From IMG/VR virus record IMGVR_UViG_3300005537_000001, positions 186,001 to 250,000 of that record: 64,000 nt of DNA; one strand, given 5' to 3'. Under the pieces are notes generated by a model that searched no databases, had not been told where the DNA came from, and saw nothing but the letters and a program-made list of their open reading frames with translations. Position numbers and translations under genes: made by a program. Below are positions 2,357-58,363 of this stretch, one piece after another (positions within the stretch are counted from its first letter, which is position 1; each line of letters starts with the position of its first letter).

Positions 2357-4228
2357 ATGAAACTCTTTGACATATTTGAAGCTGAAATCGCTACAAAGAA
2401 CGTTAGCGTCGCGCTTCCCAAGATAGCTTCATATCTTGCTAGAAAGCTTGGCGTTAAGCTTCTTCGAGTTCCTGGAGTTGAGCACTTCCACAACTCAGAT
2501 GGAAATGGTTACGGCGTACGCTACATAGTTTCTGGTGGTACCCGCTGCTTCAGAATAAACTGGAATACCGAAGGTAGCGTAGGACAGATTGCTAGCATTC
2601 ATTCGTTCGACATCTTCAACGGTACGTCCCATGATCCGACGTTTACCATTCACACCAAAGGCATCAACTTCGCCCACGCTTTACCAATGGTCGTAGCGAT
2701 AGCTCGTTCACCAGCCCTTGGTCGCCACTACATGTTTCCAGTTGACCCAAAGCTAGCTCTTACTGAAGGCGTTGTCACAGAGGTCGACAAGCCAAACGCA
2801 TTCAAAGAGGCGCTAAAGGTTAAGTGTCCGCTCTGCAAGGCAGAACCCGGTAAGGGTTGCGTAGGCGTGAGTGGTTGGCGCAAGGGCAAACAGCTTAGCA
2901 CCCTTCACAACGAGCGCCTACGAGCAGCTGGGTTTGGCACTCAAATAACGGAGTCAATTGTTGGTAAAAATGTTAGCGTGACATTTACGCATGATGACAA
3001 GCATCGTGGATCCATAGTTGACGCTGTAAGAATCAGAGCTAAAGATGATAAGGACGCTCGTAGAATATTCGATGAGGAATTTTCAAAGAATTATAAAAAT
3101 CCAAAAATCACCCGTATTCTTTTTCATTACCCGATGAAGCCAATGAAAGAAGCTTTGAACGAAGCGCATCGCGATGACTTCACCGCCGAAGAAGCTCTCA
3201 CCGACTTCTTGAAGCAGCTTGCCCAAGGTAAGACGATGACCCGTTCCGACTTCATCGGTCAGTATCACATCGTCAACGCCGGCATCTTCGACACCGTATT
3301 CAACAACTTCAAGGATAAATTTCGCATCGAGCAAAAACGAGTAGCGCTCGCGTCTAATACTAAGCTTGAAGCACTCAAGGATTCCATCCTCTCCAAGGCA
3401 GGAATCGTCGAAGTTACGAAGGGTGGCACCAAGGAAATTTACCTCAAGGGAGCTCAGGAAGAGCAGGTGGAAAAGGAAGCTGGTGATCGAGTTCCCTACG
3501 AAGACACTCTCGAGCACCTTGAAGGTCTCGTGGTGGCGCTCATCAAGGGTTCTACAAACGCCCTGTTTGTAGCTGGTAAGGGTGGCACCGGTAAAACTCA
3601 GACCGTAGAGCGCGTTCTCCACGCGGCTGGTTTATCGGATGGTAAGGGATACTTCAAGAATTCCGGTTCGGCATCAGCTTCTGGCGTCTACACTTTACTT
3701 TATCACCACCGTAATGATATAATTCTATTCGATGACTCTGACGGTGCTCTTCGAGACACAGACGCGCGCAACCTTATCAAGGCGGCCACCGACACGAAGA
3801 AGGTTCGTAAGCTTGTTTGGAACAAGAAATCATCCTTCATTTTCAATCCAGAAGAAGAGGATCCAGAAGCATATGAAGACGATCTTGGTATGGCACCTCA
3901 ATACTTTGACTTCAAAGGCCGAATCATTTTTATTTCTAACTTGTCACTCGATCAACTGGATCCCGATGGAGCCCTTCGTACCCGCGCTTTCGTTATCAAC
4001 GTTGATCCTACTGATGAAGAGCTGGTAAGCCACATGGGCAAAATCCTCATGGACATCAAGCTTGAGGATGGATTGGTTCTTGACAAGGCAGCTCGCGAGC
4101 ACGTGCTTGAAGTGGTTAAAACATCCAAGCGCAAGGGAGCTGTATCTCTCCGAATGTTGGTACGCGCGCTAAATCTCGCGGCCTCGGGAGCTCCCAACTG
4201 GGCAAAACTAGTTGAGCTGTACGCATAA
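2357..4228 (+). CDS. multidomain protein with a CPxC zinc-finger insert and a C-terminal AAA+ ATPase
   Basis: Walker A GKGGTGKT, Walker B IILFDDSD, FISN sensor and ALRTR finger; CPLCKAEPGKGC...H zinc finger; MKLFDIFEAE N-terminus. Confidence 0.8.
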   Translation: MKLFDIFEAEIATKNVSVALPKIASYLARKLGVKLLRVPGVEHFHNSDGNGYGVRYIVSGGTRCFRINWNTEGSVGQIASIHSFDIFNGTSHDPTFTIHTKGINFAHALPMVVAIARSPALGRHYMFPVDPKLALTEGVVTEVDKPNAFKEALKVKCPLCKAEPGKGCVGVSGWRKGKQLSTLHNERLRAAGFGTQITESIVGKNVSVTFTHDDKHRGSIVDAVRIRAKDDKDARRIFDEEFSKNYKNPKITRILFHYPMKPMKEALNEAHRDDFTAEEALTDFLKQLAQGKTMTRSDFIGQYHIVNAGIFDTVFNNFKDKFRIEQKRVALASNTKLEALKDSILSKAGIVEVTKGGTKEIYLKGAQEEQVEKEAGDRVPYEDTLEHLEGLVVALIKGSTNALFVAGKGGTGKTQTVERVLHAAGLSDGKGYFKNSGSASASGVYTLLYHHRNDIILFDDSDGALRDTDARNLIKAATDTKKVRKLVWNKKSSFIFNPEEEDPEAYEDDLGMAPQYFDFKGRIIFISNLSLDQLDPDGALRTRAFVINVDPTDEELVSHMGKILMDIKLEDGLVLDKAAREHVLEVVKTSKRKGAVSLRMLVRALNLAASGAPNWAKLVELYA

Positions 4229-4707
4229 TGAATCTATCTGAAATATTTAATTCGCGCGCTGACGTTGATTGGACTAGTGGATTTGGAAAATTCACGCTAG
4301 ACAACGTTACATATGGGATTTCAGCCGTGAAAGATAGTCTTGGGGATATAAGCGGGCTTGAAATATTTTTCTATACAGTTGACGATAAACATAGAAAAAT
4401 GGAGCTGACAAAACTTGATCAAAACCAATTTAAAGTTATAGGCATCGTTAAAAATGCGATTAAGCAGAAATTTCCAGGGGAAGAAGTTATTTGGTTTGTA
4501 GCAAAACATGGAATTGATGGTGAAGATATAACGCGCAGATCACATTTTTACGGGATGCTACTATCACGATTATCTAGAGAACTCAACTATCTTCAAATTT
4601 CCGGAATGTTCGGTACCGATCATGTTTATGTTCTATTCAAAGATCATTCACTACTCAGCGCGATAGCATCTAAGCTGGATAAAGTTGATGGAGAGTCAGA
4701 AGCATGA
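4228..4707 (+). CDS. hypothetical protein, putative virion-internal
   Basis: Coupled to the upstream gene; MNLSEIF N-terminus. Confidence 0.7.
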   Translation: MNLSEIFNSRADVDWTSGFGKFTLDNVTYGISAVKDSLGDISGLEIFFYTVDDKHRKMELTKLDQNQFKVIGIVKNAIKQKFPGEEVIWFVAKHGIDGEDITRRSHFYGMLLSRLSRELNYLQISGMFGTDHVYVLFKDHSLLSAIASKLDKVDGESEA

Positions 4708-5345
4708 AGCTCTTCGAAATACACAGTCCACCAGAAAAGCAGGATCTTCAGAAGCTTAGAAGCGTACTTTCTAAACCTCTTAGGCTCAAGAAATCAGACA
4801 CAAATGATTTTTATTCTGCCACGCTCTATGCAAATAGAGTGATGCATTGGGCTACGTCAATGTCTGGTACAGCTCGTTTAGATTTATCCACCATAGGTGA
4901 TGATCTACAATCTCTCATTATGCGCTTCACGTTAACGTGGTTTAAGAAAATAGTTGAAGAGCATGAAGGATCCAAGAAAAATTTACAAAACGATCTGCTT
5001 GATATCAAAAAGTGGATTCGCGATCTGAAATTTTCAAAATTTCCAACTGCAGAAATTGATGTGCTCTACAAAGCCATTTCTACACCCACAAAGAAAGTTA
5101 CTGAAGGCACAATTCCTGACGAAGAAATTACCATCACGATGGGTGTGAGGGGTGACGCTAAGCAGAAGATAGCTGAACTCCTTCACTACATCTCAAACGC
5201 ATGCTCGATGGGTTGCAGCCGCACCTGGGGTGTCGTCAATGGTGATCGAGATGAAGATTGGAAGGTTGACTTTGACGGTGATGGCGCGGATAAATTGGTC
5301 GATGTAAAGATTAATGGTCAGAAAGTTAAGGATTTCATGCGATGA
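4704..5345 (+). CDS. hypothetical protein, putative virion-internal
   Basis: MKLFEI N-terminus; divergent copy of the shared helical module. Confidence 0.7.
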   Translation: MKLFEIHSPPEKQDLQKLRSVLSKPLRLKKSDTNDFYSATLYANRVMHWATSMSGTARLDLSTIGDDLQSLIMRFTLTWFKKIVEEHEGSKKNLQNDLLDIKKWIRDLKFSKFPTAEIDVLYKAISTPTKKVTEGTIPDEEITITMGVRGDAKQKIAELLHYISNACSMGCSRTWGVVNGDRDEDWKVDFDGDGADKLVDVKINGQKVKDFMR

Positions 5346-5716
5346 AGCTGGAAGAACTTACGGCGCATCCATGCCGTTGGTCACTAGCTTTTGAAGGCAA
5401 CATGTCGCGCTATTACGGATCTGATGGCGTCGATATGAAGAAGTTGAAGCGAGCAATTTCGAACAAGTTTGATGATCTAGATGCTAAAACGCAGGATGCC
5501 TTGGTAGGTATCTATCACTGGTTAGAATTGAACGAGAAGGATTTAACCAGCAAGAAGAAGGTAATTGCGACGCTGTTAGGATTTTACAAGATGATTGATC
5601 ACAATGATACAGCCGACTATGACATCGTGAAGCAGCTAATTGAAAATTTTAGGACGTTGGGAATAGATTATCCAGAATTCAAGTCGATTGAGAAAAGTAT
5701 GGAGAGCCAGAAATGA
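5342..5716 (+). CDS. hypothetical protein with shared xPEF module
   Basis: C-terminal FRTLGIDYPEFKSIEKSM. Confidence 0.75.
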   Translation: MKLEELTAHPCRWSLAFEGNMSRYYGSDGVDMKKLKRAISNKFDDLDAKTQDALVGIYHWLELNEKDLTSKKKVIATLLGFYKMIDHNDTADYDIVKQLIENFRTLGIDYPEFKSIEKSMESQK

Positions 5717-6546
5717 GTTTAATTCAACAGTTGCTCGAAGCGCTGATGGGCCAAAAGCAGAAGCGGCTCGAGTTTCTAGTGCAAACCTACGCTCCCAAAT
5801 GGAAAGGCGTTGAGGGCTACAAGGACATTGAGAAATTCGTTGAGCGCGTCGGCACGCTCGACCCATCCCACAATGGTGCGTACATGCAGTGGATGATGAA
5901 GCTGGTGCTAAAGGATCCACACGAGAACAAGGTAGAGGATCTCGAGCGAGTTGCCGGTGATCTCAAGACGTTCGAAGAAAATAAGGCGCGCATCCAAAAC
6001 AAGGATGTCAATTCCTACAAGAGTTTCCAGGAACTGTTCAACGTAATCGAGCCATTCACCAAGCCCCGTGAAAAGAGCAAGGAAGAGCTTGAGATGGATA
6101 AGGATCTCGAGAAGCGAGAGAAAATTCGCAAGGACATCGATACCGTTTACGAAGGCCCAGAAGGTTGGATTAAAATTCCAATGACCAAGCAGGCATCGGT
6201 GTACCTTGGTCAACACACCCGCTGGTGCACCGCCGCGACGCAGTCAAGCAACATGTTCGACAGCTACAACAAGCGCGACAAGCTTTTCGTCATCTACGAC
6301 AAGGAAAAGAAAACGCGTACCCAGCTCCACGTTCAAGGAGGAGAATACCGCGACGAGAAGGATGCCTACATCGGCGTGTCAAAGCTTCCAGGCTGGGCTG
6401 GCAAGGCGATCGTTGCGTGGTACAAGAAGAATCCTGAGAAGATGGGACTGAAGCACGTCATGACTCTCGGCTCTCACGACCCGTCAATCGCTAAGGGTAC
6501 GCAGCACGAAGACGTTCTGAAACTAATGCAAAAATATGGGGTTTAG
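5713..6546 (+). CDS. hypothetical protein with a TRWCTA motif (PcfJ-like domain, tentative)
   Basis: ASVYLGQHTRWCTAA..NMFDSY motif; family call from memory of large-phage proteins. Confidence 0.55.
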   Translation: MSLIQQLLEALMGQKQKRLEFLVQTYAPKWKGVEGYKDIEKFVERVGTLDPSHNGAYMQWMMKLVLKDPHENKVEDLERVAGDLKTFEENKARIQNKDVNSYKSFQELFNVIEPFTKPREKSKEELEMDKDLEKREKIRKDIDTVYEGPEGWIKIPMTKQASVYLGQHTRWCTAATQSSNMFDSYNKRDKLFVIYDKEKKTRTQLHVQGGEYRDEKDAYIGVSKLPGWAGKAIVAWYKKNPEKMGLKHVMTLGSHDPSIAKGTQHEDVLKLMQKYGV

Positions 6547-6547
6547 C

Positions 6548-7462
6548 ATGAGTTTATCCAAGTACGCGCTGTTTATCGAGGCGGCCCAGAAGAAGGGTGA
6601 CACCAGGCCACAAGCTAAGGCCGGCACCAAGGAACGTGAGAAGATAAACAACCTAGATGACCTTCTAGGCGGCCCAAAATCGAAGGGAAGTCTCGCAAAG
6701 CCAGAACCTAAAGTTGAACCAAAATCGGCTGGAGCTGCAAAGCTTAAGGCTGCCGGTGCCGAGAAAACTAGCTTCAAGGCAGCATCAGCAACTATCGACG
6801 CAAGCAAGGCACCACGATTTAACCCTGATGAGATAGATACCAGTCAAGAAACGGATGACGTTGAAGCTTCTCACAGCGTTGGTCATTCTACAGCTGGACA
6901 CAAACCAAAACCGGTAACACCTAACACGCTCCCTGCCGTAATCTCAAAGGCGCTCACCACGATTGGTAAGGATGTCGCAAACATCGAACCAGAGTGGCAC
7001 ATGGTAAAGCATCTTCCTGGCTACATGTCAAAGGCGATCCGGGCGCTCGGGCGGCAGGTATTCTCTCCATTCACCAACACAAAGATAGAAGATATTCAAG
7101 TTGTCGCTCACGTTGGCGGTGGACCAAATACTGAAGCTGAAGTTAACGCGGTGTCCAAGTATGTTTCTGGACATGGTACCCGCGATAAAACTGCTGAGCT
7201 TGCCTTTCAAAAGGTTCTTCCAGACTACAAGGCACAGGTTGTTTCCTACAACTGCGATGGCATCACGTTCTTCATGGTGAAGGATTTCGCTGGCCACTAC
7301 ATCTACGCGTGGCCGCAGTCAGATAGCAAGGACGTTGGTGGAACAGCTCAGGCTGGAATAGAACACTCGCGTCAAGCAAGAGCCGAGCTAACTCACGATC
7401 GCAAGCTTATCGGTCATGATACCGACGACTTGAAAGATCTCATGTCAAAATACGGACTATAA
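6548..7462 (+). CDS. hypothetical protein with a K/A/P-rich N-terminal region
   Basis: ATG 6548 follows the upstream stop; long ORF with phage-like codon use. Confidence 0.75.
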   Translation: MSLSKYALFIEAAQKKGDTRPQAKAGTKEREKINNLDDLLGGPKSKGSLAKPEPKVEPKSAGAAKLKAAGAEKTSFKAASATIDASKAPRFNPDEIDTSQETDDVEASHSVGHSTAGHKPKPVTPNTLPAVISKALTTIGKDVANIEPEWHMVKHLPGYMSKAIRALGRQVFSPFTNTKIEDIQVVAHVGGGPNTEAEVNAVSKYVSGHGTRDKTAELAFQKVLPDYKAQVVSYNCDGITFFMVKDFAGHYIYAWPQSDSKDVGGTAQAGIEHSRQARAELTHDRKLIGHDTDDLKDLMSKYGL

Positions 7463-7464
7463 CT

Positions 7465-8730
7465 ATGCTGGTTTCAGAACTCCTATACGAAAGCATAATC
7501 CTTGAGCATCTTGGTAACCTTGCTCAGCTGAAAGTTGGGGCCATGATCAACATCCTCAAGCAAACAGGCCACATGGGTAGTGGTTCTGGCAAGCGGGCGT
7601 CCGGACCATCAACGTCACCAATTGGCAGACGATTTGGTAATTCATATTCCGGATCGGAAATTGGCGCGAGCAGCAAAATAGTTGACGTGGGCGTCATCAA
7701 GGATGGCATCAAAGGTCTAAGGCAGGCGTTCAAAAAGCACAGCGAAGCCAAAGCCTTCGCGCTTTACGTTGGTGGTCACGCGGTAGCCTTTGGGTCATTT
7801 GACGCGCATGATTTAGGAGGGCAGGCGCGTGGAGGTCTATTCGCATATGATTTAACTTCTCTTGAATCGGAAGTCAACAAGGAGCACGAGGCCAATCTAG
7901 CCAAGCATAAAACGCAGAGCTGGACTACTCCACCAACTCGTCTTGCAACAAGCTCTTTTCACCGTAAGATGCCGGAAGGCACGCTTGTATACGCCGACGT
8001 TGCTGACAAGGACGAATTTATCAAGGGTCTGTTGAAGCTTGTAAGAGCTGAAAAATATGGGGCGGTGAAGGCAAGCATCATGCTTGCCAAAAAGGATGGC
8101 CACAAACTTCCCGAGTTTGACAGCATAATCAAGAGCGTTGAGCATTCTGAGAAAATCGAAAATCAGGATCGATACATCTCACGGTGGGACAGGGAGCGCG
8201 ATGAGGTCAAGAATTACCAGGGTAAGATTACATCTACCGGTGAGTTCATGCACTTTCTAACCAGACTCATTGTCTTGGCCGACAAGAAACCAATTACGGC
8301 TAAGTTGGTTGTGCGCGATCCGGATCTTTACCAGCTGCGCGTTGATCGCAATAAGCGCAGACCAGCTGAACTATCTACACAGCAGTCCCTTGAAGACCTA
8401 AAGATTCGGCTTACCAAGTTCAAGCTAGCCAAGAAACCAACGGTCAACTCCATCCATGAATTCATTGATGAAGCAAAGAAGAAGGTTCTCAAGGTTGTCC
8501 AATTTGACGGAAGAAGCTGGAGCACCATCCCTAAGAAAACATGGGATAGTGACAAAATAGCGCCAGAAGATTTACTTGCTGGAAGATCCTTCAAGCTAAG
8601 GTACAGCACCAAGGATCCAGGTGCCTACGAAAGCATTTACATCACCTACAAGTTTGACCCAAGCACAAGCACTATCGCGCCAATCAATGCCGAATGGTCC
8701 GGTAAGAAAGTTACTCTTGGTAAAGAATGA
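7465..8730 (+). CDS. hypothetical protein with shared xPEF module
   Basis: MLVSELLYE start; internal KDGHKLPEFDSIIKSV. Confidence 0.75.
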   Translation: MLVSELLYESIILEHLGNLAQLKVGAMINILKQTGHMGSGSGKRASGPSTSPIGRRFGNSYSGSEIGASSKIVDVGVIKDGIKGLRQAFKKHSEAKAFALYVGGHAVAFGSFDAHDLGGQARGGLFAYDLTSLESEVNKEHEANLAKHKTQSWTTPPTRLATSSFHRKMPEGTLVYADVADKDEFIKGLLKLVRAEKYGAVKASIMLAKKDGHKLPEFDSIIKSVEHSEKIENQDRYISRWDRERDEVKNYQGKITSTGEFMHFLTRLIVLADKKPITAKLVVRDPDLYQLRVDRNKRRPAELSTQQSLEDLKIRLTKFKLAKKPTVNSIHEFIDEAKKKVLKVVQFDGRSWSTIPKKTWDSDKIAPEDLLAGRSFKLRYSTKDPGAYESIYITYKFDPSTSTIAPINAEWSGKKVTLGKE

Positions 8731-9713
8731 TGAAAACGACTTTCAAAAAGTTCATGGGCGTTGATCGTCCGTTCGAACCTAAACCGTTACCACCTCCAAA
8801 GCAGCCGCATCCAGTTCCCAAGGGCTACAAGCGCGTCAAGGATGGAAGCTTCAACAAACTCGTGAAGATTGATGAGGTCTTTGCCCCACACCCATATTCG
8901 ACACATCTCCTTAACGCGCTTGAGCGTGGTATGTATTCAAAGGCGGAGGTGATGAAGGTTATACTCAAAAAGCTTAAAGATTACGGAGGTGATGACAGCT
9001 TTGGCAGTTTAACAAATCTTATCAAAGTATTCCGAGATGCCGGTCACAAATGGCCGGAATTCGATGCGATAGAGAGATCTTTGAAGGAAGAAACTCTTGA
9101 TGAGATTTCGCTCAAGCACGCCGCGGCCGCAACCGTTCTTGGTGCATCAATGCTCGCGCCAAAGCATACAGCTCACGCAACCGACGTCAACCCTCGCCGG
9201 CAAACATTTTCCCAAATGGTAGCCAAGCAGGCAGAAATGCCAAAGCTGGACGCTAAGGAAGAAAAGGCAGTTAATCAAATTGTCAAGCGCTACGGTGTCA
9301 ATGGTGAGCTGGCAGCGAAGGTTGTTCAGCTAGCTCAAAAATATGAGCACCCAGAATTTCCGAAGGCTAAGGATATCCTCGCGATAGTTGGCATTGAGAG
9401 CAGCTTCAACCCGAAGGCAAAATCCGGGTTGAAGAAAGATCCAGCAGTTGGGTTGATGCAGTTTAGACCTTCAGCTTGGAAGGTTGCAGATGCCAATGAC
9501 GTTGAGACGCAGATAAAGAAGGGGGCCGAAATTCTCAACACCTATTACCGTCATCTTTTCAGCCACAAAGATCGCGCGATACAGGCCTACAACATCGGGT
9601 TGGCAAAGTACAAGGAAGCAAGAGACAATCCCGAAGAAAACCAAGAAATTTTGGACGCTCAAAAGCGCTACCTGGACAAGTACAACCGTGAGGTTGTACA
9701 CTACGAGCTCTAG
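8727..9713 (+). CDS. lytic transglycosylase (SLT domain) with N-terminal cargo-like modules
   Basis: AIVGIESSFNP (catalytic Glu), AVGLMQ, AIQAYNIG; upstream AGHKWPEFDAIERSL. Confidence 0.85.
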   Translation: MMKTTFKKFMGVDRPFEPKPLPPPKQPHPVPKGYKRVKDGSFNKLVKIDEVFAPHPYSTHLLNALERGMYSKAEVMKVILKKLKDYGGDDSFGSLTNLIKVFRDAGHKWPEFDAIERSLKEETLDEISLKHAAAATVLGASMLAPKHTAHATDVNPRRQTFSQMVAKQAEMPKLDAKEEKAVNQIVKRYGVNGELAAKVVQLAQKYEHPEFPKAKDILAIVGIESSFNPKAKSGLKKDPAVGLMQFRPSAWKVADANDVETQIKKGAEILNTYYRHLFSHKDRAIQAYNIGLAKYKEARDNPEENQEILDAQKRYLDKYNREVVHYEL

Positions 9714-9759
9714 CTTCACCCATTTAACATAATGGTGTCATTTAACATAATGTGAAAAG

Positions 9760-9787
9760 TGTACTTTCGGTCAGGTCATGATATAAT
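9760..9787 (+). promoter_or_regulatory. early (sigma70-type) promoter
   Basis: TGTACT-N16-TATAAT, preceded by two ATTTAACATAA boxes. Confidence 0.75.
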
Positions 9788-9793
9788 ACCTAC

Positions 9794-10114
9794 ATGATGA
9801 AGACTCGGAAGCGACGTTCAGACCGTATGCACCTCATATACGCTCTGACGAACATGGCAACCAACGAAAAGTATGTAGGCATGGCGGTTTGCATCGATCG
9901 CTCCGGTAAGGAAACACTCGCCGCCCGCTGGTGCCGACACGTGGGTCGAGCGAAGCATCAGAACAAAAACTGGAGCTTGTGCAAGTCGATTCGAAAGCAC
10001 GGACCCCAAGCTTTCTCACAGGAAATTATCGAGTTCGTTCGCGGCAAAGCCGAAGCGCACGCTCGCGAAACTGAAATCAAGAAGACCGGAAAATACGCTC
10101 TCAACACGGCGTGA
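9794..10114 (+). CDS. GIY-YIG-like endonuclease (Seg-like, minimal)
   Basis: LIYALTN...YVG...RW..H...F...IIE...A...E. Confidence 0.7.
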   Translation: MMKTRKRRSDRMHLIYALTNMATNEKYVGMAVCIDRSGKETLAARWCRHVGRAKHQNKNWSLCKSIRKHGPQAFSQEIIEFVRGKAEAHARETEIKKTGKYALNTA

Positions 10115-10126
10115 TGGAGATTCCCG

Positions 10127-10453
10127 ATGTGCTATTCCCGAAACGCGATGATTGAAAATTTCGAAAAGATGGTCAACTATGCCCATCAAGCTGATCCAAC
10201 TGGCCAGCGATTTCAGCAGTTCGCTAAAGATCCTCTTCCTCCCTGGGCGGTGGATCTTCAGGAAACTCTGGAAGCAGACTCCTCCACGGCGATCGAATTT
10301 TTCCAGCTCGCTCAAAACGATTGTCCCCAATGCGGTGGCTTTGGCTACACGATGGAGACCAACGGCGAGGATGGGGAGACGATGGTTGGTTGCTTCCGCT
10401 GTTGGGTTGCCCATCAGGAACGCAGCATTCCGACTCTCGTGGACGCCGTATGA
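10127..10453 (+). CDS. hypothetical protein with CxxC...CxxC zinc ribbon
   Basis: CPQCGG...CFRC; GGAG RBS. Confidence 0.65.
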   Translation: MCYSRNAMIENFEKMVNYAHQADPTGQRFQQFAKDPLPPWAVDLQETLEADSSTAIEFFQLAQNDCPQCGGFGYTMETNGEDGETMVGCFRCWVAHQERSIPTLVDAV

Positions 10454-10668
10454 TGCAGCTTCTTCACCTCGATCCTACAAAGCGATCGGTTTACTTCATC
10501 ACCGACATCGGCGAGGATTTGATTGCGTCAGCCTCCGATGGAACCGAGCTGCCGCTACCGCGCTACGGCGTTTGGCGGCGCGATGTTGGCGTGGTGGAAG
10601 CTGGTGAGGACATCGCGTTTCTTCAGGAAAAGTACAACGTTCCCAACTCTCAGGTGCACGTGCTATGA
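10450..10668 (+). CDS. hypothetical protein
   Basis: ATGA-coupled start at 10450, shorter than the track ORF. Confidence 0.6.
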   Translation: MMQLLHLDPTKRSVYFITDIGEDLIASASDGTELPLPRYGVWRRDVGVVEAGEDIAFLQEKYNVPNSQVHVL

Positions 10669-11030
10669 AAGCCCAGCTCGTTAAACTTCCTCCTGGCCGT
10701 CGTAAATTCGGCAAGTATCCGTGCAACGACGTTGACAGCTGTGGAAATGCGTGGGGAATCCCAACGTTAAACCAAGCGTATATAGATGGATACAACACTG
10801 GTGCCAATTGGAAGGATTCCTACGATCCAGGCGGACCTTTTACACATAGTTGGAGTGAGTACTACGAGCGCGTCCACCCCGAGGACTGGCAGGACCTTAA
10901 AGCTTATTGCGACGCCACCATAGAAAATTACCAGGAATGGCATCGAGGCTTCAAGGATGCTCGTAAGGGCATTCCTCCACTGCTACCCGAACTGAATCTT
11001 GATAAAATCGCAATCTTGGGGTACAACTAA
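10665..11030 (+). CDS. hypothetical protein
   Basis: Coupled ORF. Confidence 0.65.
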   Translation: MKAQLVKLPPGRRKFGKYPCNDVDSCGNAWGIPTLNQAYIDGYNTGANWKDSYDPGGPFTHSWSEYYERVHPEDWQDLKAYCDATIENYQEWHRGFKDARKGIPPLLPELNLDKIAILGYN

Positions 11031-11368
11031 TGAGTGAGCGAGAAGAATTTACGCAAGCTCTCGCGGATATCATTCGTGAGATGCGGAGATGGACGGCCCC
11101 GTACGGGATAATTGTTGGGATGCACGCTGAAGGTCGAGGCAAGGTTCGCACGATAACCTTCGGAGTTGCTCGACTTCTTGACGCAACAGTAAAGGTCTAC
11201 AGCTCCAGCTACATCGTTCTGGAATCTCAGGGTCCGATGGCCCAGTTCGGAAGTCCCATCACGTTTCGAACACCTCGAGATGCAGTTCTTCCAGAGCGAG
11301 AATCAGCAGCTGCCCAACTTCTCGATTTCATCAAGAAGAATTGGGTTTTCGACGACGCCCGGTACTAA
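11030..11368 (+). CDS. hypothetical protein
   Basis: TAATG coupling. Confidence 0.65.
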   Translation: MSEREEFTQALADIIREMRRWTAPYGIIVGMHAEGRGKVRTITFGVARLLDATVKVYSSSYIVLESQGPMAQFGSPITFRTPRDAVLPERESAAAQLLDFIKKNWVFDDARY

Positions 11369-11377
11369 GAGGAAATC

Positions 11378-11536
11378 ATGAACACCAGATTTTTGCTAGA
11401 TGAAGCTGAAAATCAGGATACCTTCGAACGCTTCCAAAAGCGCCGCAAGCTTGACGATGAAAGCTCTCGCGACCGCAAAAACTCGCGAAAGAAGTTCAGC
11501 CATCGGCCTCAGCAACGTGAACATGACAAAGTCTGA
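11378..11536 (+). CDS. small charged hypothetical protein (52 aa, absent from track)
   Basis: GAGG RBS; MNTRFLLDEAENQDTFERFQKRRK... Confidence 0.6.
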   Translation: MNTRFLLDEAENQDTFERFQKRRKLDDESSRDRKNSRKKFSHRPQQREHDKV

Positions 11537-12098
11537 TAAGCCCAAGGCTAAAAGATGGGTTCGGCTTCGGACGATGTCGCTTGAGCATGGACTTGCGTAT
11601 CTCAACGAGCCGCGCCAAGAGCGCAAAATCCGTGACAACTGGGTTGAGAGCACCAGCCAAAGCGCCAAGACGCGGTTGAAGATGTTCAAGAATGGGCAGA
11701 TAAGGTGCGTGAGCTGCGGGCTCGAAGGAAGCCACTGGCACATCGAGCGGGCTATCAACGATCTGGTGATGCCGTTCAGCATCAACCTTTATGGGCTGGT
11801 TCCAATTAGCGTCGGCGACATCAATAAGCCGGATGAAATAAAGTATACATGGGATGAGGTCATGCTTACGCACGATCATATTCTTCCGCGTTCTCTTGGA
11901 GGGTCCAACAACATCGCAAACGCCCAGTGCATGTGCGAGCCCTGTAACAACAAGAAGGCCAACTTTGTAGGTTTGTCCGAGCTGCTGCGAATCGCGTGCC
12001 ATTCAGATCCGATGGCTATTCACAAGCTCAATTCACCCGAAACAGATACGAAAAATTTGAAGTCAACGATCGCGCGGGCCAGAGCTGAGCTTCGATAA
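11523..12098 (+). CDS. HNH endonuclease
   Basis: CVSC...LTHDHILPRSLGGSNNIANAQCMCEPCNNKK; start moved to ATG 11523. Confidence 0.85.
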   Translation: MTKSDKPKAKRWVRLRTMSLEHGLAYLNEPRQERKIRDNWVESTSQSAKTRLKMFKNGQIRCVSCGLEGSHWHIERAINDLVMPFSINLYGLVPISVGDINKPDEIKYTWDEVMLTHDHILPRSLGGSNNIANAQCMCEPCNNKKANFVGLSELLRIACHSDPMAIHKLNSPETDTKNLKSTIARARAELR

Positions 12099-13059: not shown

Positions 13060-13088
13060 TGTACTTGCTCAGGTTGATAGATTACAAT
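13060..13088 (+). promoter_or_regulatory. early promoter
   Basis: TGTACT-N17-TACAAT with ATTTAACATAA-type boxes upstream. Confidence 0.65.
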
Positions 13089-13122
13089 GTCTTCGTTGTT
13101 TGAACTACTGGAGATCGCTGAA

Positions 13123-14085
13123 GTGTCTAACGTTGCTCAACTCTCCCTGGATGGTCGGTCCAACAAATGGGTCGCTATCTTCGCAGGAAAGATTCTCGCC
13201 TCATCCCCCAACAAGGAATACGTCGTCAACAACATCCGAGCTGGTCGCTGCACCAAAGCGAATCAAGTACGCGTAACGGACGTCAAGGAAATCGGTGAAA
13301 CCGAAACCGTGACCAACGCGGTCGGCAAGGAAATCCAGCAGAAAGTGGACAAATTCGGAATCAACGAGCGGTTCGACTTCATGGAGGACTTCGTCTCCAT
13401 GGTCGCGGACCGAACCTCTCCTTCTCTTCTCGTAACCGGCGAGGGCGGTCTCGGCAAGACCTTCACGGTCAATAAAGCCCTTCGAACCAACAAGCTTCAG
13501 AAACTCGATCTTGAGGAGCTCACCGTTGGAGCTACCATCGACGACCACAAGTTCTACACGGTGGTCAAGGGGTACTCCACGGCAAAGGGCCTCTATCGGA
13601 CCCTCTGGGAAAATCGCAACCGACTGGTGGTCTTCGATGACTGCGACAGCGTCCTCCGCGATCCGGTCGCCCTCAACATCCTCAAGGGCGCTCTCGACTC
13701 CTACGACAAGCGCATCATCTCCTGGAACGCGGAATCCTTCGGAGACGACGATCTTCCCCGCTCCTTCGAGTTCAAGGGTGGAGTCATCTTCATCTCGAAC
13801 CTCCCAATCTTCAAGATCGACCAGGCGGTCCGCTCACGTTGCATCAGCGTGGACCTCTGCATGACCACGGCTCAGAAAATCGAGCGCATGGAAATGATCA
13901 TCAAGGGAGACGAGTTTCTCCCTGAGGTGGACATGAAAACCAAGCGCCACGCTCTGGACTTCCTCGAGAAGATGAAGGACGAAGCACGCGAGCTCTCCCT
14001 TCGAACCCTCATCGCGGTCACCAAGGTGGCTGCACGAGGTGGAGAATGGAAGCGTCGAGCCGAATATCTCCTCACGGCGGTTTAA
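13123..14085 (+). CDS. AAA+ ATPase, paralog of the 2357 ATPase domain
   Basis: GEGGLGKT, VVFDDCD, FISN, AVRSR. GTG start with GGAG RBS chosen because ATG 13087 overlaps the -10 box. Confidence 0.8.
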   Translation: MSNVAQLSLDGRSNKWVAIFAGKILASSPNKEYVVNNIRAGRCTKANQVRVTDVKEIGETETVTNAVGKEIQQKVDKFGINERFDFMEDFVSMVADRTSPSLLVTGEGGLGKTFTVNKALRTNKLQKLDLEELTVGATIDDHKFYTVVKGYSTAKGLYRTLWENRNRLVVFDDCDSVLRDPVALNILKGALDSYDKRIISWNAESFGDDDLPRSFEFKGGVIFISNLPIFKIDQAVRSRCISVDLCMTTAQKIERMEMIIKGDEFLPEVDMKTKRHALDFLEKMKDEARELSLRTLIAVTKVAARGGEWKRRAEYLLTAV

Positions 14086-19252: not shown

Positions 19253-19339
19253 GATTGAGACTCCATTAAAAATGATATTTAGAAGAAAACATGTTGTTAT
19301 TGTCTGATACAGATTTTGGACATTCCCATAAATAAATTT

Positions 19340-20869: not shown

Positions 20870-21421
20870 CTAATCAAGAGACTTGCTGGCTGACATGCTC
20901 TTCTGTATGGCCTTAAGCTCAGGCCAATTATGCACTTTTTCTAGCGAGTGAAGTAAAGCTGATAAAAACATTTTGGAATCCTCTAAACCAAACCAAAATG
21001 TGCCATGTTCAGAATCGGCATCAACAACTTCTCGATATTTTGCCAACAGTATTTTTATCGTCTTTTCTTTATCTTCGGTACTACCGAGCGCGGCCCGAAC
21101 AAAATCAGCATCGTTGAGCACCTCTATTTCAAAGGGCGGAGTTTCCTCAAGCTGTGAACGTACGATGAAGCATGGTCGTTTACCTCTTAACCATATCACC
21201 GAAACATTATTATTCGCCCCACCATGTTTGGCGTAATATGTTACTTGTTGAGAATTGACGTCGAAACCAGAATTCGTGCGGCCATTCCAACTGTAAAGCG
21301 TACCATCATAATCTATTTCATCTGGGCGCATCGCCATTCCACCACCGACAGTTTCTGCAAATTCATCTAAAGTCTCAACAGAGATCATTTCGTGTGATTC
21401 GAGAAATTCTTTGAATTTCAT
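20870..21421 (-). CDS. hypothetical protein with C-terminal WPEL module
   Basis: MKFKEFLE start at 21421 (ATGA overlap); HNWPELKAIQKSM. Confidence 0.75.
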   Translation of the reverse strand: MKFKEFLESHEMISVETLDEFAETVGGGMAMRPDEIDYDGTLYSWNGRTNSGFDVNSQQVTYYAKHGGANNNVSVIWLRGKRPCFIVRSQLEETPPFEIEVLNDADFVRAALGSTEDKEKTIKILLAKYREVVDADSEHGTFWFGLEDSKMFLSALLHSLEKVHNWPELKAIQKSMSASKSLD

Positions 21422-35168: not shown

Positions 35169-35176
35169 GGAATATT

Positions 35177-35494: not shown

Positions 35495-35499
35495 AAAGT

Positions 35500-35528
35500 T
35501 TTACTTAACGCTGGCAACAGGATATAAT
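35500..35528 (+). promoter_or_regulatory. early promoter
   Basis: TTTACT-N17-TATAAT. Confidence 0.75.
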
Positions 35529-35533
35529 GACTT

Positions 35534-51953: not shown

Positions 51954-52382
51954 TTAAAGTCCTGCATTTAATTTCCCTCGGTCGTTGAGTAAGCTTCTCG
52001 CGATGATCTCCAGCTCATGATTGACGAAGCTGACAGCGTAAGCCGCGCCGATGATTCGAAGCACCAGCTCCTGTTCATCATCTGCAATCGCCTTCTTTAG
52101 CCCCTTTAGGATCCATGGAACCAGGTCGACGAGTGGAGTTATCGCTAACCAGGGTACGTCTTGACCGTACTGGTTCAGGTGCCACCCCACCGTTGAATAA
52201 TATCCACTGCGTCCTACAACGCCACCTTGGGATATGTCTATCAGCTCGCTAAGTGCGATTGTAGATAGCTGAGTTTCCAGCTTTCTGATTTCAAACAACA
52301 GCTCTAACTTTCCCAGCTTGAACGGGTTGTCGAACGGGTTAATCGTTTGACGCGACCTGGTGGCGATAAGGTATTGGTTCAT
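51954..52382 (-). CDS. hypothetical protein, paralog of 52469
   Basis: TPLVDLVPWILKGL...NHELEIIARSL; promoter TGTACT-N17-TAAAAT at 52391-52419. Confidence 0.7.
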   Translation of the reverse strand: MNQYLIATRSRQTINPFDNPFKLGKLELLFEIRKLETQLSTIALSELIDISQGGVVGRSGYYSTVGWHLNQYGQDVPWLAITPLVDLVPWILKGLKKAIADDEQELVLRIIGAAYAVSFVNHELEIIARSLLNDRGKLNAGL

Positions 52383-52468: not shown

Positions 52469-52885
52469 TCAAAAGGCGCGCGGGAACGTAAAAGCGCGCC
52501 GCGCGAATTCCGCGCGTCTGTCTTCAACTACCTCGGACCTCAGGCTGTTCTCGATGATGTCAAGCTCCTGATCCTGGTGACCGCTCTCCTTAACGATCTC
52601 GATTATCAGCAGGATCTCGGCCGCGAGACCGGTAGCGACGGCGTCCCGGAGCCCAGCGAGCAGCCACGGTACCAGCTGGGACAGCGGCGTTAGCTGGACC
52701 GGATGCTGCGTGATCCCAACCTTCTTTATCCCTAGAAATTCCTTCAGCGTCTGCGGCGGTTGAAGCGCGTACTCGAGAGAGCGCAGCGTCTGCCAGTCCA
52801 TGACGAGATAATCGGTCGTCGGTCTGTCGACCAGCTCGGCCTGCCAGCCGTGAGCCAACCCAATCAGGAAGTCTGTTTCACTCAT
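52469..52885 (-). CDS. hypothetical protein, paralog of 51954
   Basis: TPLSQLVPWLLAGL...GHQDQELDIIENSL. Confidence 0.7.
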   Translation of the reverse strand: MSETDFLIGLAHGWQAELVDRPTTDYLVMDWQTLRSLEYALQPPQTLKEFLGIKKVGITQHPVQLTPLSQLVPWLLAGLRDAVATGLAAEILLIIEIVKESGHQDQELDIIENSLRSEVVEDRRAEFARRAFTFPRAF

Positions 52886-52927
52886 GCGCTAATTGTAACA
52901 CCAGGCGAGCTGGTAGTAAATAGACGC

Positions 52928-53638
52928 ATGCTGATACAAGATCTACAATCAATTCTAACCGAAGCTCAGGCTCGGCTGTACGCCGGCTGGGTTGGAGCTC
53001 GATCCCACAACTCTTCGGCTATTCACATTTTTATTCCAGATCATAATCATCCGGGTAATAGCCCTAGCAGCCCAATATATGTTTATCCAGGCTTACCATT
53101 TTCAGCTAGTAACGGTGCTCCAGGTACAACAGCTCCAGCTGGAACGAAGGTGTCAATCGGTGGTAAAACAAGCATCAAGGAATTTATCAATTCTGACTAT
53201 GGGATTCGGATGTACGGTCCGTTCATCAAGTTGATTAAATCCCAAAAGATTACAGATCAACAGCTACTTGATTTTGGCGCCAACATCTTAGCGCAAGTTA
53301 TCGCGAGCGGCGCCGACGAGGATAAATATTTTTCGTTTAAAGCCAAGCTACCGACCCAAGATGATATCATTCGGGGAATTCTCAAGATTTACAAGGATGA
53401 GCCCAAGGAGGTTAAGAGATTTATCTCCAACGCCAAGAAGCTTGGGTACAAGATTCCAGACGACGTGCTTGGAGCGATCTCAAAGTCGATCACCCACACT
53501 CGCAAGACTGAGGAGGCGGCGCGTCATGATAGCGCCGTCGCGGCGGCAAAGTCAGCTTTAGATAGAGCGCACCAGCGCCACGAGGATGCGGTTGCACGGC
53601 GTAACGCCTTCTTGAAGAAACACGGATTAGAAAGCTAA
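52928..53638 (+). CDS. late hypothetical protein with shared helical module
   Basis: TAAATA at 52917-52922, 5 nt before the ATG; MLIQDLQSILTEA; KLGYKIPDDVLGAISKS. Confidence 0.75.
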   Translation: MLIQDLQSILTEAQARLYAGWVGARSHNSSAIHIFIPDHNHPGNSPSSPIYVYPGLPFSASNGAPGTTAPAGTKVSIGGKTSIKEFINSDYGIRMYGPFIKLIKSQKITDQQLLDFGANILAQVIASGADEDKYFSFKAKLPTQDDIIRGILKIYKDEPKEVKRFISNAKKLGYKIPDDVLGAISKSITHTRKTEEAARHDSAVAAAKSALDRAHQRHEDAVARRNAFLKKHGLES

Positions 53639-57796: not shown

Positions 57797-58363
57797 GTGA
57801 ATTTACATCAACTTCTAGAAGCAGCAGCTCCAACATTTGATAATTTGACAGGTAAAGACATTGGGCTTCATCCACACATATTTGGGGCTCCATTCGTGGC
57901 TGTCAGGTGGAAGATAGGTGGAAATAATGGGCAAGCCCTCGTGGATTTCCCGGCTGGTAAGCCGCCCATCGTATCAACGCGCGGCGAAGATACAGAGCGA
58001 GCATTCATAGCAGCAAATAAAAGCCTACTGATAGATTTTGCAAGTAACCTACTGCTGCAGGCGGTCGCGCTAGGTACTGATTTCACAGGTGCCCGCGATC
58101 GCCCATCGAAATATAAACCGGTATCAAGTCAGGCCTTGGCGCGCGGAATTTTATCGTGGTACAAAACAGTTAACCATAAAATGATGACCAATCTGCTTGC
58201 GACAGTTAAGGCGGTGGGTGGTCATCTACCAGCTGACGTTGTAGCCGCTGTGGGAAAGAGCATTGGCGTTACTCGTGTCGTGGAGCTTAAAAAGCGAATC
58301 GCGTCAACTAAAGCTAGTCTTGCTAAAATGGAAGCCGAACTAGCGGAGCTGGAAGCAAAATAG
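57797..58363 (+). CDS. late hypothetical protein with shared helical module and coiled-coil tail
   Basis: MNLHQLLEAA; KAVGGHLPADVVAAVGKS. Confidence 0.7.
   Translation: MNLHQLLEAAAPTFDNLTGKDIGLHPHIFGAPFVAVRWKIGGNNGQALVDFPAGKPPIVSTRGEDTERAFIAANKSLLIDFASNLLLQAVALGTDFTGARDRPSKYKPVSSQALARGILSWYKTVNHKMMTNLLATVKAVGGHLPADVVAAVGKSIGVTRVVELKKRIASTKASLAKMEAELAELEAK

What the first reader, a model, noticed from the sequence alone, without database searches (positions are those of the whole stretch)
5342..9713. Unnamed ~50-aa helical module (G-x-x-WPE[LF]-x-x-I-x-x-S) shared by about 9 otherwise unrelated proteins
Seen copies: 5342 FRTLGIDYPEFKSIEKSM; 7465 AKKDGHKLPEFDSIIKSV; 8727 FRDAGHKWPEFDAIERSL; 20870 LEKVHNWPELKAIQKSM; 52928 AKKLGYKIPDDVLGAISKSI; 57797 VKAVGGHLPADVVAAVGKSI. 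Weaker copies occur in 4704, 51954 (NHELEIIARSL) and 52469 (SGHQDQELDIIENSL). Each is preceded by an I/L-x-x-x-L-L-x-x-[YL]-K helix. The module is attached to different domains (transglycosylase, unknowns), as a modular tag would be. Inference: a sorting, packaging or ejection tag, or a common docking domain for a phage or host partner. I know no family name for it.
Basis: partly seen in the sequence, partly recalled or inferred. Interest (0 to 1): 0.85.

Follow-up and report, generated by a model that had tools for sequence, protein, structure and literature searches.

The report
Unnamed helical bead domain of jumbo phages
The shared 50-65-residue helical module is real and marks a large, unnamed protein family found only in very large phages, where it occurs 1 to about 14 times per protein in a fast-changing gene cassette; its function is unknown, most likely docking.

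Summary
A profile built only from metagenomic proteins outside the window scores five carriers at 34-58 bits, against 8.9 bits for the best of 6,732 shuffled or reversed decoys. The gene at 57797 is a paralog of the 52928 gene. The copies at 52469 and 51954 are weak but above every decoy. The copy at 4704 is not supported.

The module has no Pfam or PHROG family and no PDB or BFVD fold match. An exhaustive search found 393 proteins, all metagenomic, on contigs up to 519 kb. They carry up to about 14 copies each. AlphaFold predicts independent three-helix beads joined by disordered acidic linkers.

The module is position-independent. It is added to the N-terminus of a transglycosylase family, and it sits mid-protein here but at the C-terminus in all 24 homologs of the 7465 protein. 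Module genes lie in a conserved cassette between homologs of 5713 and 7465.

All six strong carriers also start with a short motif resembling the T4 capsid-targeting sequence. That motif is a better candidate for a sorting tag than the module.

My best reading is a multivalent docking bead of variable, possibly virion-internal, proteins. The function is inferred, not shown.

The parts
5342..5716 (+). Carrier 1 (124 aa), a minimal single unit. It starts MKLEELT and its module is at the C-terminus (DNA about 5522-5713).
   Evidence: ORF. Independent profile 56.6 bits. Leave-one-out E = 1.3e-9.
7465..8730 (+). Carrier 2 (421 aa). It starts MLVSELLYE and its module is mid-protein (DNA about 7993-8148). 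It is the conserved last gene of the cassette.
   Evidence: 38.4 bits. There are 24 homologs of about 420 aa, each with one module, but at the C-terminus. Homologs close the cassette in L005/L013, L008, L009, L014, L016 and L017.
8727..9713 (+). Carrier 3 (328 aa). It starts MMKTTFKKF. Its module is at residues about 63-123 (DNA about 8910-9092). Then come a conserved LDEISLKH motif, an Ala/Gly-rich hydrophobic segment ending AHA, and an SLT lytic transglycosylase domain (residues 215-305).
   Evidence: 58.3 bits. PF01464 at 52.1 bits against a cut-off of 21.3. Homolog architectures.
20870..21421 (-). Carrier 4 (183 aa from the ATG at 21421). It starts MKFKEFLE, like T4 IPI, which starts MKTFKEF. 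Its module is at the C-terminus (DNA about 20882-21088). The upstream gene in the same operon, 21418-22005(-), starts (L)KVRELFE.
   Evidence: 34 bits. Leave-one-out E = 4.9e-5. N-termini. T4 IP N-termini.
52928..53638 (+). Carrier 5 (236 aa from the ATG at 52928). It starts MLIQDLQSILTE. Its module is at DNA about 53333-53503 and has a 2-residue insertion (IPDDVL). A charged helical tail follows.
   Evidence: 35-36.5 bits. The public cluster representative begins at this same Met. Paralog of 57797.
57797..58363 (+). Carrier 6 (188 aa, GTG start). It reads (M)NLHQLLEAA. It has a divergent module at DNA about 58130-58273 and a charged helical tail.
   Evidence: BLASTP to the 52928 protein, 8e-10 over 106 aa. 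Only 2.0 bits with the independent profile, so membership rests on paralogy.
52469..52885 (-). Weak copy (138 aa). Its module-like stretch is at DNA about 52532-52672. It is divergently transcribed from carrier 5.
   Evidence: 16.1 bits, above every one of 6,732 decoys.
51954..52382 (-). Borderline copy (142 aa). Its module-like stretch is at DNA about 51981-52121.
   Evidence: 9.6 bits against a best decoy of 8.9. Paralog of 52469 (BLASTP 1.4e-7).
5713..6546 (+). Conserved first gene of the cassette (277 aa, no module). It starts MSLIQQLLE. It is possibly PcfJ-like.
   Evidence: 44-54% identical homologs lie immediately upstream of the module genes in L002, L005/L013, L008, L009, L014, L016 and L017. 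Its homolog in phage PA5oct, EST35_0205, starts MKLFEVF, is annotated 'structural protein, ESI-MS/MS', and lies next to TerL. The PcfJ link is an Atlas lead only and Pfam does not detect it.
2357..4228 (+). AAA-type ATPase with a zinc-finger (623 aa). It starts MKLFDIFEAE and heads the same tightly packed gene string. A homolog lies next to the cassette in L008.
   Evidence: phrog_1250 and PF24623. tblastn to L008 at 7e-26.
4704..5345 (+). Claimed weak copy. It is NOT supported as a module carrier. It does share the N-terminal motif (MKLFEIH).
   Evidence: No hit with either profile.

Best explanation
SHOWN. The module is an autonomous domain of about 50-65 residues. Its core is a three-helix bundle, preceded by one extra helix or a beta-hairpin. 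It defines a large, unnamed protein family confined to jumbo and mega phages.

The signature is K-x-x-[IV]-[IV]-[KR]-x-h-L-x-x-h-K, then a variable loop, then h-x-x-L-[RK]-x-x-G-h-x-W-P-E-[LF]-x-x-I-x-[KR]-S-h. Here h is a hydrophobic residue.

The domain occurs from once to about 14 times per protein, as beads joined by disordered acidic linkers. It can sit at any position relative to other domains.

Its genes cluster in a cassette whose gene content varies greatly between phages. The cassette is bounded by two conserved genes, homologs of 5713 and of 7465. This phage carries a minimal version (5342, 7465, 8727) plus dispersed single-module genes.

INFERRED. The module is a protein-protein docking bead. 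It tethers variable cargo to one common partner, and arrays of it give multivalency. Known cargo includes the SLT transglycosylase here, and a ParB-like nuclease, a polynucleotide kinase and many unknown domains elsewhere.

MOST LIKELY SETTING, stated with less confidence. These are virion-internal proteins that are injected with the DNA. The short N-terminal motif would take them into the prohead, as the T4 capsid-targeting sequence does for internal proteins. The motif has two forms, M-K-L-x-E-h-F-E and MK(T)FK(E/K)F. The module would bind a core or hub component, possibly the 5713-like protein. So the module would be the docking part, not the address label.
For: A real family: an exhaustive HMMER search of 1.84 billion representatives found 393 proteins at E<=1e-3, 148 at <=1e-10 and 25 at <=1e-30, with up to 13 stretches per protein. 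A profile built from those proteins alone recovers the window copies far above the decoys.

Fold: AF2 on the module alignment gives pLDDT 86.9 and pTM 0.72, with four helices. The six-module protein P0091 gives a beta-hairpin plus three helices per unit, linkers below pLDDT 50, and pTM 0.34, which means beads on a string.

Portability: see the SLT family and the 7465 family.

Cassette synteny holds in seven independent loci.

Phage-only distribution:
- Contigs reach 519 kb and lie next to T4-type topoisomerase II, ribonucleotide reductase and similar genes.
- No relative was found among 185,579 GTDB genomes with the WPELDIIx[KR] pattern.

Cargo domains.

Leads towards virion targeting:
- All six strong carriers have the N-terminal motif in one of its two forms, against 7 of 117 other genes (Fisher 4e-7, post hoc).
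- 42 of 147 metagenomic members have it, and Glu at position 8 is enriched (p = 1e-11).
- T4 IPI, IPII and IPIII start MKTFKEF or MKTYQEFIAE. The 20870 protein starts MKFKEFLE.
- T4's capsid-targeting sequence is a 10-20 aa propeptide. Giant-phage ejection proteins have propeptides of more than 100 aa, and in SPN3US gp47 the propeptide is followed by a transmembrane segment (PMC5694885, PMC3012670). That matches the 8727 layout of N-terminal region, then L-D-E, then hydrophobic segment, then SLT.
- The PA5oct homolog of cassette gene 5713 starts MKLFEVF, was detected in virions by mass spectrometry, and lies next to TerL (PMC7318152).
Against: There is no direct evidence that any module protein is in a virion, and no partner has been identified.

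In the five loci with Pfam-annotated context (window, L005/L006, L007, L008, L009), the cassette lies among replication, metabolic or unannotated genes, not morphogenesis genes.

The part of PA5oct I scanned (118-143 kb) has no module. In 100 kb of PA5oct, only 2 of 5 genes starting with the loose N-terminal motif are virion proteins.

The N-terminal motif also heads an AAA ATPase (2357), an unlikely capsid passenger.

The motif definitions were made after seeing the data. The resemblance to the T4 capsid-targeting sequence needs a one-residue shift.

No conserved cleavage motif follows the module.

The phage's prohead protease and scaffold lie outside the window and were not examined.
Confidence: 0.4

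Rival explanations
1. Intracellular host-interaction repeats. The module arrays would be variable binding surfaces, playing the role that ankyrin, LRR or DUF4116 arrays play in other large viruses. They would be made inside the infected cell to capture host or defence proteins, or to scaffold a replication or assembly zone. They would not be packaged. The N-terminal motif would be only a conserved amphipathic first helix.
For: The cassette sits among non-structural genes in the loci examined.

Copy number and gene number change strongly between related phages, as expected under an arms race.

For the cassette's first gene, 5713, the Atlas structural neighbours are viral proteins that carry LRR, LRV, WG-beta or DUF4116 repeats. 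This suggests that interchangeable repeat arrays accompany this protein type.

Multivalent beads joined by acidic disordered linkers fit a scaffold or a condensate.
Against: It does not explain the strong link between the module and an N-terminus resembling the T4 capsid-targeting sequence.

It does not explain the virion-detected PA5oct homolog of 5713.

The core positions are highly conserved (K 95%, L 96%, W 90%, P 90%, E 97%, S 95%). That fits one constant partner better than many diverse targets.
Confidence: 0.3
2. Substrate or adaptor tag for a phage AAA+ machine. The module, the N-terminal motif or both would be recognised by the ATPase encoded nearby: the 2357-like AAA protein, or the FtsH-like protease next to the cassette in L005. 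The machine would then unfold, degrade or translocate the carriers.
For: A 2357-like AAA ATPase lies next to the cassette in the window and in L008. An FtsH-like protease follows the cassette in L005, L006 and L013.
Against: The linkage is loose. L002, L007 and L009 show no ATPase within the fetched flanks. The ATPase itself carries the N-terminal motif. Arrays of up to 14 modules are hard to explain as degrons.
Confidence: 0.1
3. Nucleic-acid-binding, helix-turn-helix-like domain. The G-h-x-W-P-E-L-x-x-I-x-K-S-L stretch would be the turn and the recognition helix, and arrays would coat DNA.
For: The spacing G-h-x-x-x-x-h-x-x-h loosely recalls helix-turn-helix motifs (my inspection). A few low-probability Foldseek hits of the P0091 model are winged-helix regulators (all E>0.9).
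Against: The modules carry no net charge, at -0.002 per residue, and the linkers are acidic. No helix-turn-helix family appears in Pfam. No fold match reaches E<0.4. In the model the hairpin comes before the helices, not after them, unlike a winged helix.
Confidence: 0.05
4. Chance resemblance or compositional artefact of Lys/Glu/Leu-rich helices.
For: The only PDB sequence hits are de novo designed helical repeat proteins, which shows that composition contributes.
Against: See the leave-one-out, independent-profile and decoy tests. Positions W, P, E, S, G, K and L are 81-97% conserved over 519 repeats. Orthologs at 64-68% identity keep the module.
Confidence: 0.01

Closest known systems
T4 capsid-targeting sequence (CTS) and internal proteins IPI, IPII, IPIII and Alt
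   Same: Both are sets of otherwise unrelated, fast-evolving proteins that share a short conserved N-terminus. T4 has MKTYQEFIAE and MKTFKEFTST. This phage has MKFKEFLE, MMKTTFKKF and MKLxEhFE. In both, a hydrophobic-x-Glu falls within the first 8-12 residues. In both, the genes are scattered outside the morphogenesis clusters.
   Different: The T4 proteins have no shared internal domain and no repeats. Here the hallmark is a folded bead of about 55 aa, repeated up to about 14 times. Cleavage and packaging have not been shown here. The register differs by one residue in most carriers.
Long N-terminal propeptides of giant-phage ejection proteins (SPN3US gp47, gp53 and gp54; phiKZ inner-body paralogs; PMC5694885)
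   Same: In both cases paralogous head proteins have conserved N-termini. A propeptide of more than 100 aa precedes a hydrophobic segment. In 8727 the CTS-like start and the module are followed by L-D-E, a hydrophobic segment and the SLT domain.
   Different: No sequence or fold similarity was detected. In most carriers the module is C-terminal, not within an N-terminal propeptide. There is no proteomics for this clade.
Polyvalent proteins and their LPD domains (Iyer et al. 2017, PMC5512222)
   Same: Both include giant multidomain phage proteins. These join occasional effector domains (SLT or lysozyme, ParB-like nuclease, kinase) through uncharacterised helical domains, and are proposed to be injected with the DNA.
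   Different: No Pfam LPD, MuF or zincin peptidase domain is present. Most members here are nearly pure arrays of one bead, with few enzymes. There is no association with a portal, MuF or type IV secretion system.
Repeat arrays of large viruses (ankyrin, LRR, LRV, DUF4116)
   Same: Both show lineage-specific expansions of a small binding repeat with variable copy number. Such arrays are found beside or fused to PcfJ-like proteins in phages.
   Different: Here each unit folds on its own as a bead with flexible linkers, rather than forming a continuous solenoid. There is no sequence or fold match to any of these families.

Membership tests
T4-type CTS-bearing internal head proteins | A conserved N-terminal capsid-targeting peptide of 10-20 aa (T4: MKTYQEFIAE or MKTFKEFTST) | tested here: inconclusive
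   20870 starts MKFKEFLE and 8727 starts MMKTTFKKF. The other four strong carriers start M-[KNL]-[LV]-x-[EDQ]-[LF]-h. All six carriers have one form, against 7 of 117 other genes. The resemblance is short, was defined post hoc, and needs a one-residue shift.
T4-type CTS-bearing internal head proteins | Removal of the CTS by a gp21-type prohead protease after (L/I)-x-E | not testable with these tools
   A hydrophobic-x-E lies within the first 12 residues of the carriers. Glu at position 8 occurs in 19 of 42 family N-termini (p = 1e-11). The SLT family keeps L-D-E before its hydrophobic segment. Cleavage itself needs protein chemistry.
T4-type CTS-bearing internal head proteins | The protein is present inside virions | not testable with these tools
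   The only evidence is indirect. The PA5oct homolog of the neighbouring cassette gene 5713 is annotated as detected in virions by ESI-MS/MS (PMC7318152).
T4-type CTS-bearing internal head proteins | The genome encodes a T4-like prohead protease and scaffolding core | not tested
   These genes are not in the 64-kb window. The rest of the 368-kb contig was not retrievable as a whole.
Polyvalent proteins (Iyer et al. 2017) | Several enzymatic effector domains in one large polypeptide, with LPD, MuF or zincin domains | tested here: not met
   Pfam finds only SLT in 8727. It finds no LPD, MuF or peptidase domain in the carriers or in the members tested: 7 whole top proteins and 10 long non-repeat segments. 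Single members carry a ParB-like domain or a polynucleotide kinase.
Known helical repeat families (HEAT/ARM, TPR, Sel1, ankyrin, DUF4116, LRV) | A match to the family profile or fold | tested here: not met
   There is no Pfam hit for the module. Foldseek against PDB and BFVD gives a best E of 1.3 and 3.1. The PDB profile search returns only de novo designs.
Pfam DUF6745 | A score above the gathering threshold with an aligned domain | tested here: inconclusive
   Two giant L002 proteins sum to 35.8 and 51.5 bits against a cut-off of 27. These sums come from many faint matches to about 20 profile positions, and none is individually significant. No window carrier matches. This is probably a short-motif echo.
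Helix-turn-helix DNA-binding domains | A profile or fold match, and a basic surface | tested here: not met
   There is no Pfam helix-turn-helix hit. The modules carry no net charge. There is no significant fold match.
SLT lytic transglycosylase (PF01464), for the C-terminal domain of 8727 only | A profile match above the gathering score | tested here: met
   52.1 bits against 21.3, at residues 215-305. 89 homologs carry PF01464.
PcfJ-like (PF14284), for cassette gene 5713 only | A profile match | tested here: inconclusive
   The Atlas feature search gives a score of 0.93 to viral clusters in which 26% of members carry PcfJ. Pfam itself finds nothing in 5713 or four of its homologs, even at E<=1.

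The most novel reading that the evidence does not exclude
Jumbo phages of this clade would have a previously unrecognised cargo-delivery system. It would be a cassette of greatly varying gene content that encodes proteins with a T4-CTS-like N-terminal address and 1 to about 14 copies of a new docking bead. The beads would load variable effector domains into the prohead by binding a conserved hub, the 5713-like protein or a core protein. The cargo would then be injected with the DNA. [quoted passage not shown]
Probability: 0.25. Interest if true: 0.8.

Novelty: new variant of a known kind. Interest (0 to 1): 0.6.

Why it matters
Huge phages carry hundreds of genes with no assigned function. This family accounts for a visible share of that unknown coding capacity. 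At least 393 clusters at 50% identity belong to it, some proteins exceed 2,000 aa, and some phages have four to nine such genes in a row.

It also comes with a recognisable cassette and a candidate address peptide. Naming the domain would let annotators flag these genes.

If the docking and targeting model holds, it would make testable how very large capsids are loaded with variable internal proteins. It would also give a portable pair of parts, address plus bead, for loading foreign proteins into phage heads, as the T4 capsid-targeting sequence already allows.

If instead the arrays act inside the cell, they would be the jumbo-phage counterpart of the ankyrin and LRR expansions of giant viruses.

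Tried and rejected
- Megablast of 4000-12000 against INPHARED found nothing.
- tblastn of the SLT carrier and of two multi-module proteins (P0091, P0100) against isolated phages found no module-bearing hit.
- A 40-kb stretch of the 642-kb uncultured phage LR756502, around its AAA homolog, has no modules.
- Pfam and PHROGs give nothing on the carriers, on the top members or on their long non-repeat segments, apart from SLT, ParB-like, polynucleotide kinase, DUF5661/phrog_17056 and DUF6267.
- Foldseek of both models against PDB, and of the module model against BFVD, found nothing significant.
- The PDB sequence-profile search returned only designed repeat proteins.
- The ESM Atlas gave no lead on 5342 or P0109.
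- Promoter and terminator scans were not above the shuffled expectation. There is no T4 late promoter TATAAATA in the window, so timing could not be inferred.
- I tested whether the N-terminal motif is a nucleotide-level signal. Codon choice varies, so the conservation is at the protein level.
- I tested a polyprotein idea, with conserved cleavage sites after each module. No motif follows the module end.
- In PA5oct, 2 of 5 genes with the loose N-terminal motif were detected by mass spectrometry. This is inconclusive. I scanned only 100 kb and did not fetch the rest.
I used alignment A4 instead.
- The claimed copy in 4704 is rejected.

Full report
**Where the window comes from.** The window is 64 kb of a 368-kb viral contig, IMGVR_UViG_3300005537_000001. 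It carries a T4-type split topoisomerase II. The best isolated relatives of that enzyme are Xanthomonas phages X1 and BUDD at about 51% identity, then XacN1. There is no nucleotide-level match to any isolated phage. Recognisable genes in the window are non-structural. They include a MazG-like hydrolase, HNH and GIY-YIG endonucleases, a phosphoesterase, an ABC-type ATPase, an ADP-ribosylglycohydrolase and two phrog_1250 AAA ATPases.

**Checking the observation.** All six quoted strong copies lie in good ORFs.
- In leave-one-out profile searches of all 849 six-frame ORFs, the left-out copy was always the top non-training hit. The E-values ran from 1.4e-10 to 4.9e-5 for five copies and 0.064 for 57797.
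- The 57797 protein is a clear paralog of the 52928 protein.
- I built a profile only from repeats of metagenomic proteins found later, with no window sequence in it. It scores five carriers at 34-58 bits, 52469 at 16.1 and 51954 at 9.6. The best of 6,732 shuffled or reversed decoys scores 8.9.
- The claimed copy in 4704 is not supported.

This gives six solid copies, two weak ones and one rejected.

**What the module is.** Close relatives of the SLT carrier include proteins with two modules in tandem (P0004, P0007). That extended the unit to about 65 residues.
- AlphaFold2 on the 12-sequence module alignment gives four helices, pLDDT 86.9 and pTM 0.72.
- Neither this model nor a six-module protein model matches anything in PDB or BFVD.
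- Pfam, PHROGs, a PDB sequence-profile search and the ESM Atlas give no family.

An exhaustive HMMER search of 1.84 billion cluster representatives found 393 proteins at E<=1e-3, and 148 at <=1e-10. All are metagenomic and unnamed.
- Most carry several modules. With the larger profile the range is 1 to 14, in proteins of up to 2,070 aa.
- Spacing between modules peaks near 110 and 150 residues. In about two thirds of proteins the last module ends within 15 residues of the C-terminus.
- Over 519 repeats the signature positions are strongly conserved: K 95%, L 96%, G 81%, W 90%, P 90%, E 97%, I 85% and S 95%.
- The modules carry no net charge and the linkers are acidic.
- The model of P0091 shows each unit as a beta-hairpin plus three helices. 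Linkers have low confidence and the overall pTM is 0.34. The units are therefore independent beads, not a rigid solenoid.

**Portability.**
- Most of the 89 homologs of the SLT protein are about 200 aa. They begin MK[VL]xE[IL][IL], continue with QLDEI[SN]LKH, an Ala/Gly-rich hydrophobic segment and an A-x-A, and then the SLT domain. They have no module. The window protein and its nearest relatives have replaced the extreme N-terminus with an extension of 60-125 residues that contains one or two modules.
- In the 7465 family, all 24 homologs have exactly one module at the C-terminus. The window protein lacks that one and has a module inserted mid-protein.

The domain therefore works independently of its position.

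**Genomic setting.** In seven independent loci, on contigs from 27 to 519 kb, the same order recurs.
- First comes a 5713-like gene, 44-54% identical to the window gene.
- Then come zero to about seven genes full of modules.
- Last comes a 7465-like gene.
- One 493-kb phage has four giant module genes close together: 917, 2,070, 1,768 and 2,369 aa.
- A 2357-like AAA ATPase or an FtsH-like protease is sometimes adjacent.
- Flanking genes are replication, metabolic or unannotated genes.
- A scan of 185,579 bacterial and archaeal genomes for the most conserved peptide found no relative. IMG/VR gave five loci.

The window phage has a minimal cassette (5342, 5713, 6536, 7465, 8727) and extra single-module genes elsewhere.

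**A second shared feature.**
- Twelve of 123 predicted genes start with M-x-[LVIF]-x-[EDQN]-[LIF]-h. These include five of the six strong carriers (Fisher 2e-5).
- The only two genes starting MK..[FY][KQ][EQK][FY] are the carriers 8727 and 20870. So all six strong carriers have one of the two forms.
- Codon choice varies, so the conservation is at the protein level.
- 42 of 147 metagenomic members share the first form, with Glu enriched at position 8.
- All but one of the 7465 homologs have a clear version of it, and so does most of the module-less SLT family.
- The T4 internal proteins, read from the T4 record, start MKTYQEFIAE and MKTFKEFTST. The 20870 protein starts MKFKEFLE. In locus L008, several consecutive cassette genes have [ST]FKQF or TFKTY within their first eight residues.
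- In T4 this peptide is the capsid-targeting sequence. It takes otherwise unrelated internal proteins into the scaffolding core (PMC3012670) and is removed by the prohead protease gp21 (PMC5694885); that gp21 cuts after (L/I)-x-E is from my own knowledge.

These motif definitions were made after seeing the data, so I treat them as a lead.

**Other leads towards virion association.**
- The 5713 homolog in the isolated jumbo phage PA5oct is EST35_0205. It is 31% identical over 186 aa and starts MKLFEVF. It is annotated as a structural protein found by ESI-MS/MS and lies next to the large terminase (PMC7318152).
- The layout of 8727 is an N-terminal region, then L-D-E, a hydrophobic segment and a peptidoglycan-cutting domain. 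This parallels SPN3US ejection protein gp47, whose long propeptide precedes a transmembrane segment (PMC5694885).
- A few family members carry a ParB-like nuclease or a polynucleotide kinase domain. These are typical of injected polyvalent proteins (PMC5512222).

**Evidence against virion association.**
- The cassette never lies among morphogenesis genes in the loci seen.
- The part of PA5oct I scanned has no module.
- The loose N-terminal motif is not clearly enriched among PA5oct virion proteins in the 100 kb I scanned, at 2 of 5.
- An AAA ATPase also carries the motif.
- No cleavage motif follows the module.

**Verdict.** The module is a new, widespread, phage-restricted bead domain. Its most probable role is a position-independent docking unit that gives multivalency.

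My preferred setting is capsid-targeted, co-injected variable proteins, in which the N-terminal motif is the address and the module is the docking part. I hold the full statement at about 0.4 and the complete delivery-system reading at about 0.25. The main rival, at 0.3, is an intracellular host-interaction or scaffolding repeat.

Noticed in passing
window 2357, 4228, 4704, 5342, 5713, 7465, 12536(-), 21421(-), 22005(-), 51239(-), 52928, 57514, 57797 (gene starts): These genes share an N-terminal protein-level motif, M-[KNL]-[LVI]-x-[EDQ]-[LIF]-h-(E). Twelve of 123 predicted genes match the strict pattern, and 5713 fits with a one-residue shift. The second form, MK(T)FK(E/K)F, occurs on 8727 and 20870. 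Both forms resemble the T4 capsid-targeting sequence. The motif is also common in the metagenomic family and in the module-less SLT family.
   Followed up: partly
window 5713-6546 and 6536-7462; loci L002, L005, L008, L009, L013, L014, L016, L017: The 5713 family is the conserved first gene of the module cassette. It ends in a conserved G-T-x-H-E-D-L-x-x-L-M-K-K-Y-G-[VLI]. The neighbouring gene 6536 has no module but ends in a similar D-D-L-K-D-L-M-S-K-Y-G-L. The Atlas suggests that the 5713 protein is PcfJ-like, but Pfam does not confirm it.
   Followed up: partly
window 9092-9180 (8727 residues about 123-150) and homologs P0005-P0090: The SLT family has a conserved Q-L-D-E-I-[SN]-L-K-H, then an Ala/Gly-rich, weakly hydrophobic stretch, then an A-x-A. 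This could be a signal peptide with an unusually long acidic N-terminal region, a SAR-type (signal-anchor-release) anchor, or the start of a mature ejection protein after cleavage at L-D-E. I could not decide between these.
   Followed up: partly
window 2357-4228 and 13087-14085: These are two paralogous phrog_1250 AAA-type ATPases. The first has a phage zinc-finger (PF24623) and a long N-terminal extension. Homologs occur in T4-like phages, where some are annotated 'thioredoxin', and in PA5oct.
   Followed up: no
window 9794-10114, 11400-12098, 19316-20191: These are putative homing endonuclease genes. A GIY-YIG SegE-like gene lies directly after the cassette, and there are two HNH genes. My simple gene caller left 19253-20174 empty, although a 291-aa TTG-start ORF with an HNH match lies there.
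   Followed up: no
window 52886-52927: This is a 42-bp divergent intergenic region between 52469(-) and 52928(+). It has sigma-70-like hexamers on both strands, with TTTACT-17-TACAAT and a TG on the minus strand. These end only 5-6 nt before the start codons, which suggests near-leaderless transcripts. Across the region, promoter-like sites were not above the shuffled expectation.
   Followed up: partly
L002:17294-22600 and L002:22611-26213: Two giant module proteins give summed Pfam DUF6745 scores above threshold, through many faint matches to about 20 profile positions. One of them starts with a DUF6267 domain (E = 5.7e-18). The meaning is unknown.
   Followed up: no
window 42570-43529 and 33114-36907: There is an ADP-ribosylglycohydrolase homolog (phrog_6572). 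There is also a T4-type topoisomerase II, split into two genes with a small ORF (35177-35494) between them. In locus L007 a 1,528-aa module protein follows the topoisomerase genes directly.
   Followed up: no
L008:7626-13014: Four of the five consecutive genes listed here (not the 7465 homolog at 10001) begin with near-identical peptides: MKTFKTYL, MKPSFKQF, MLLNSFKQF and MELSSFKQF. They include the 5713 homolog and the AAA ATPase homolog. These are very close to the T4 IPI start, MKTFKEF.
   Followed up: no
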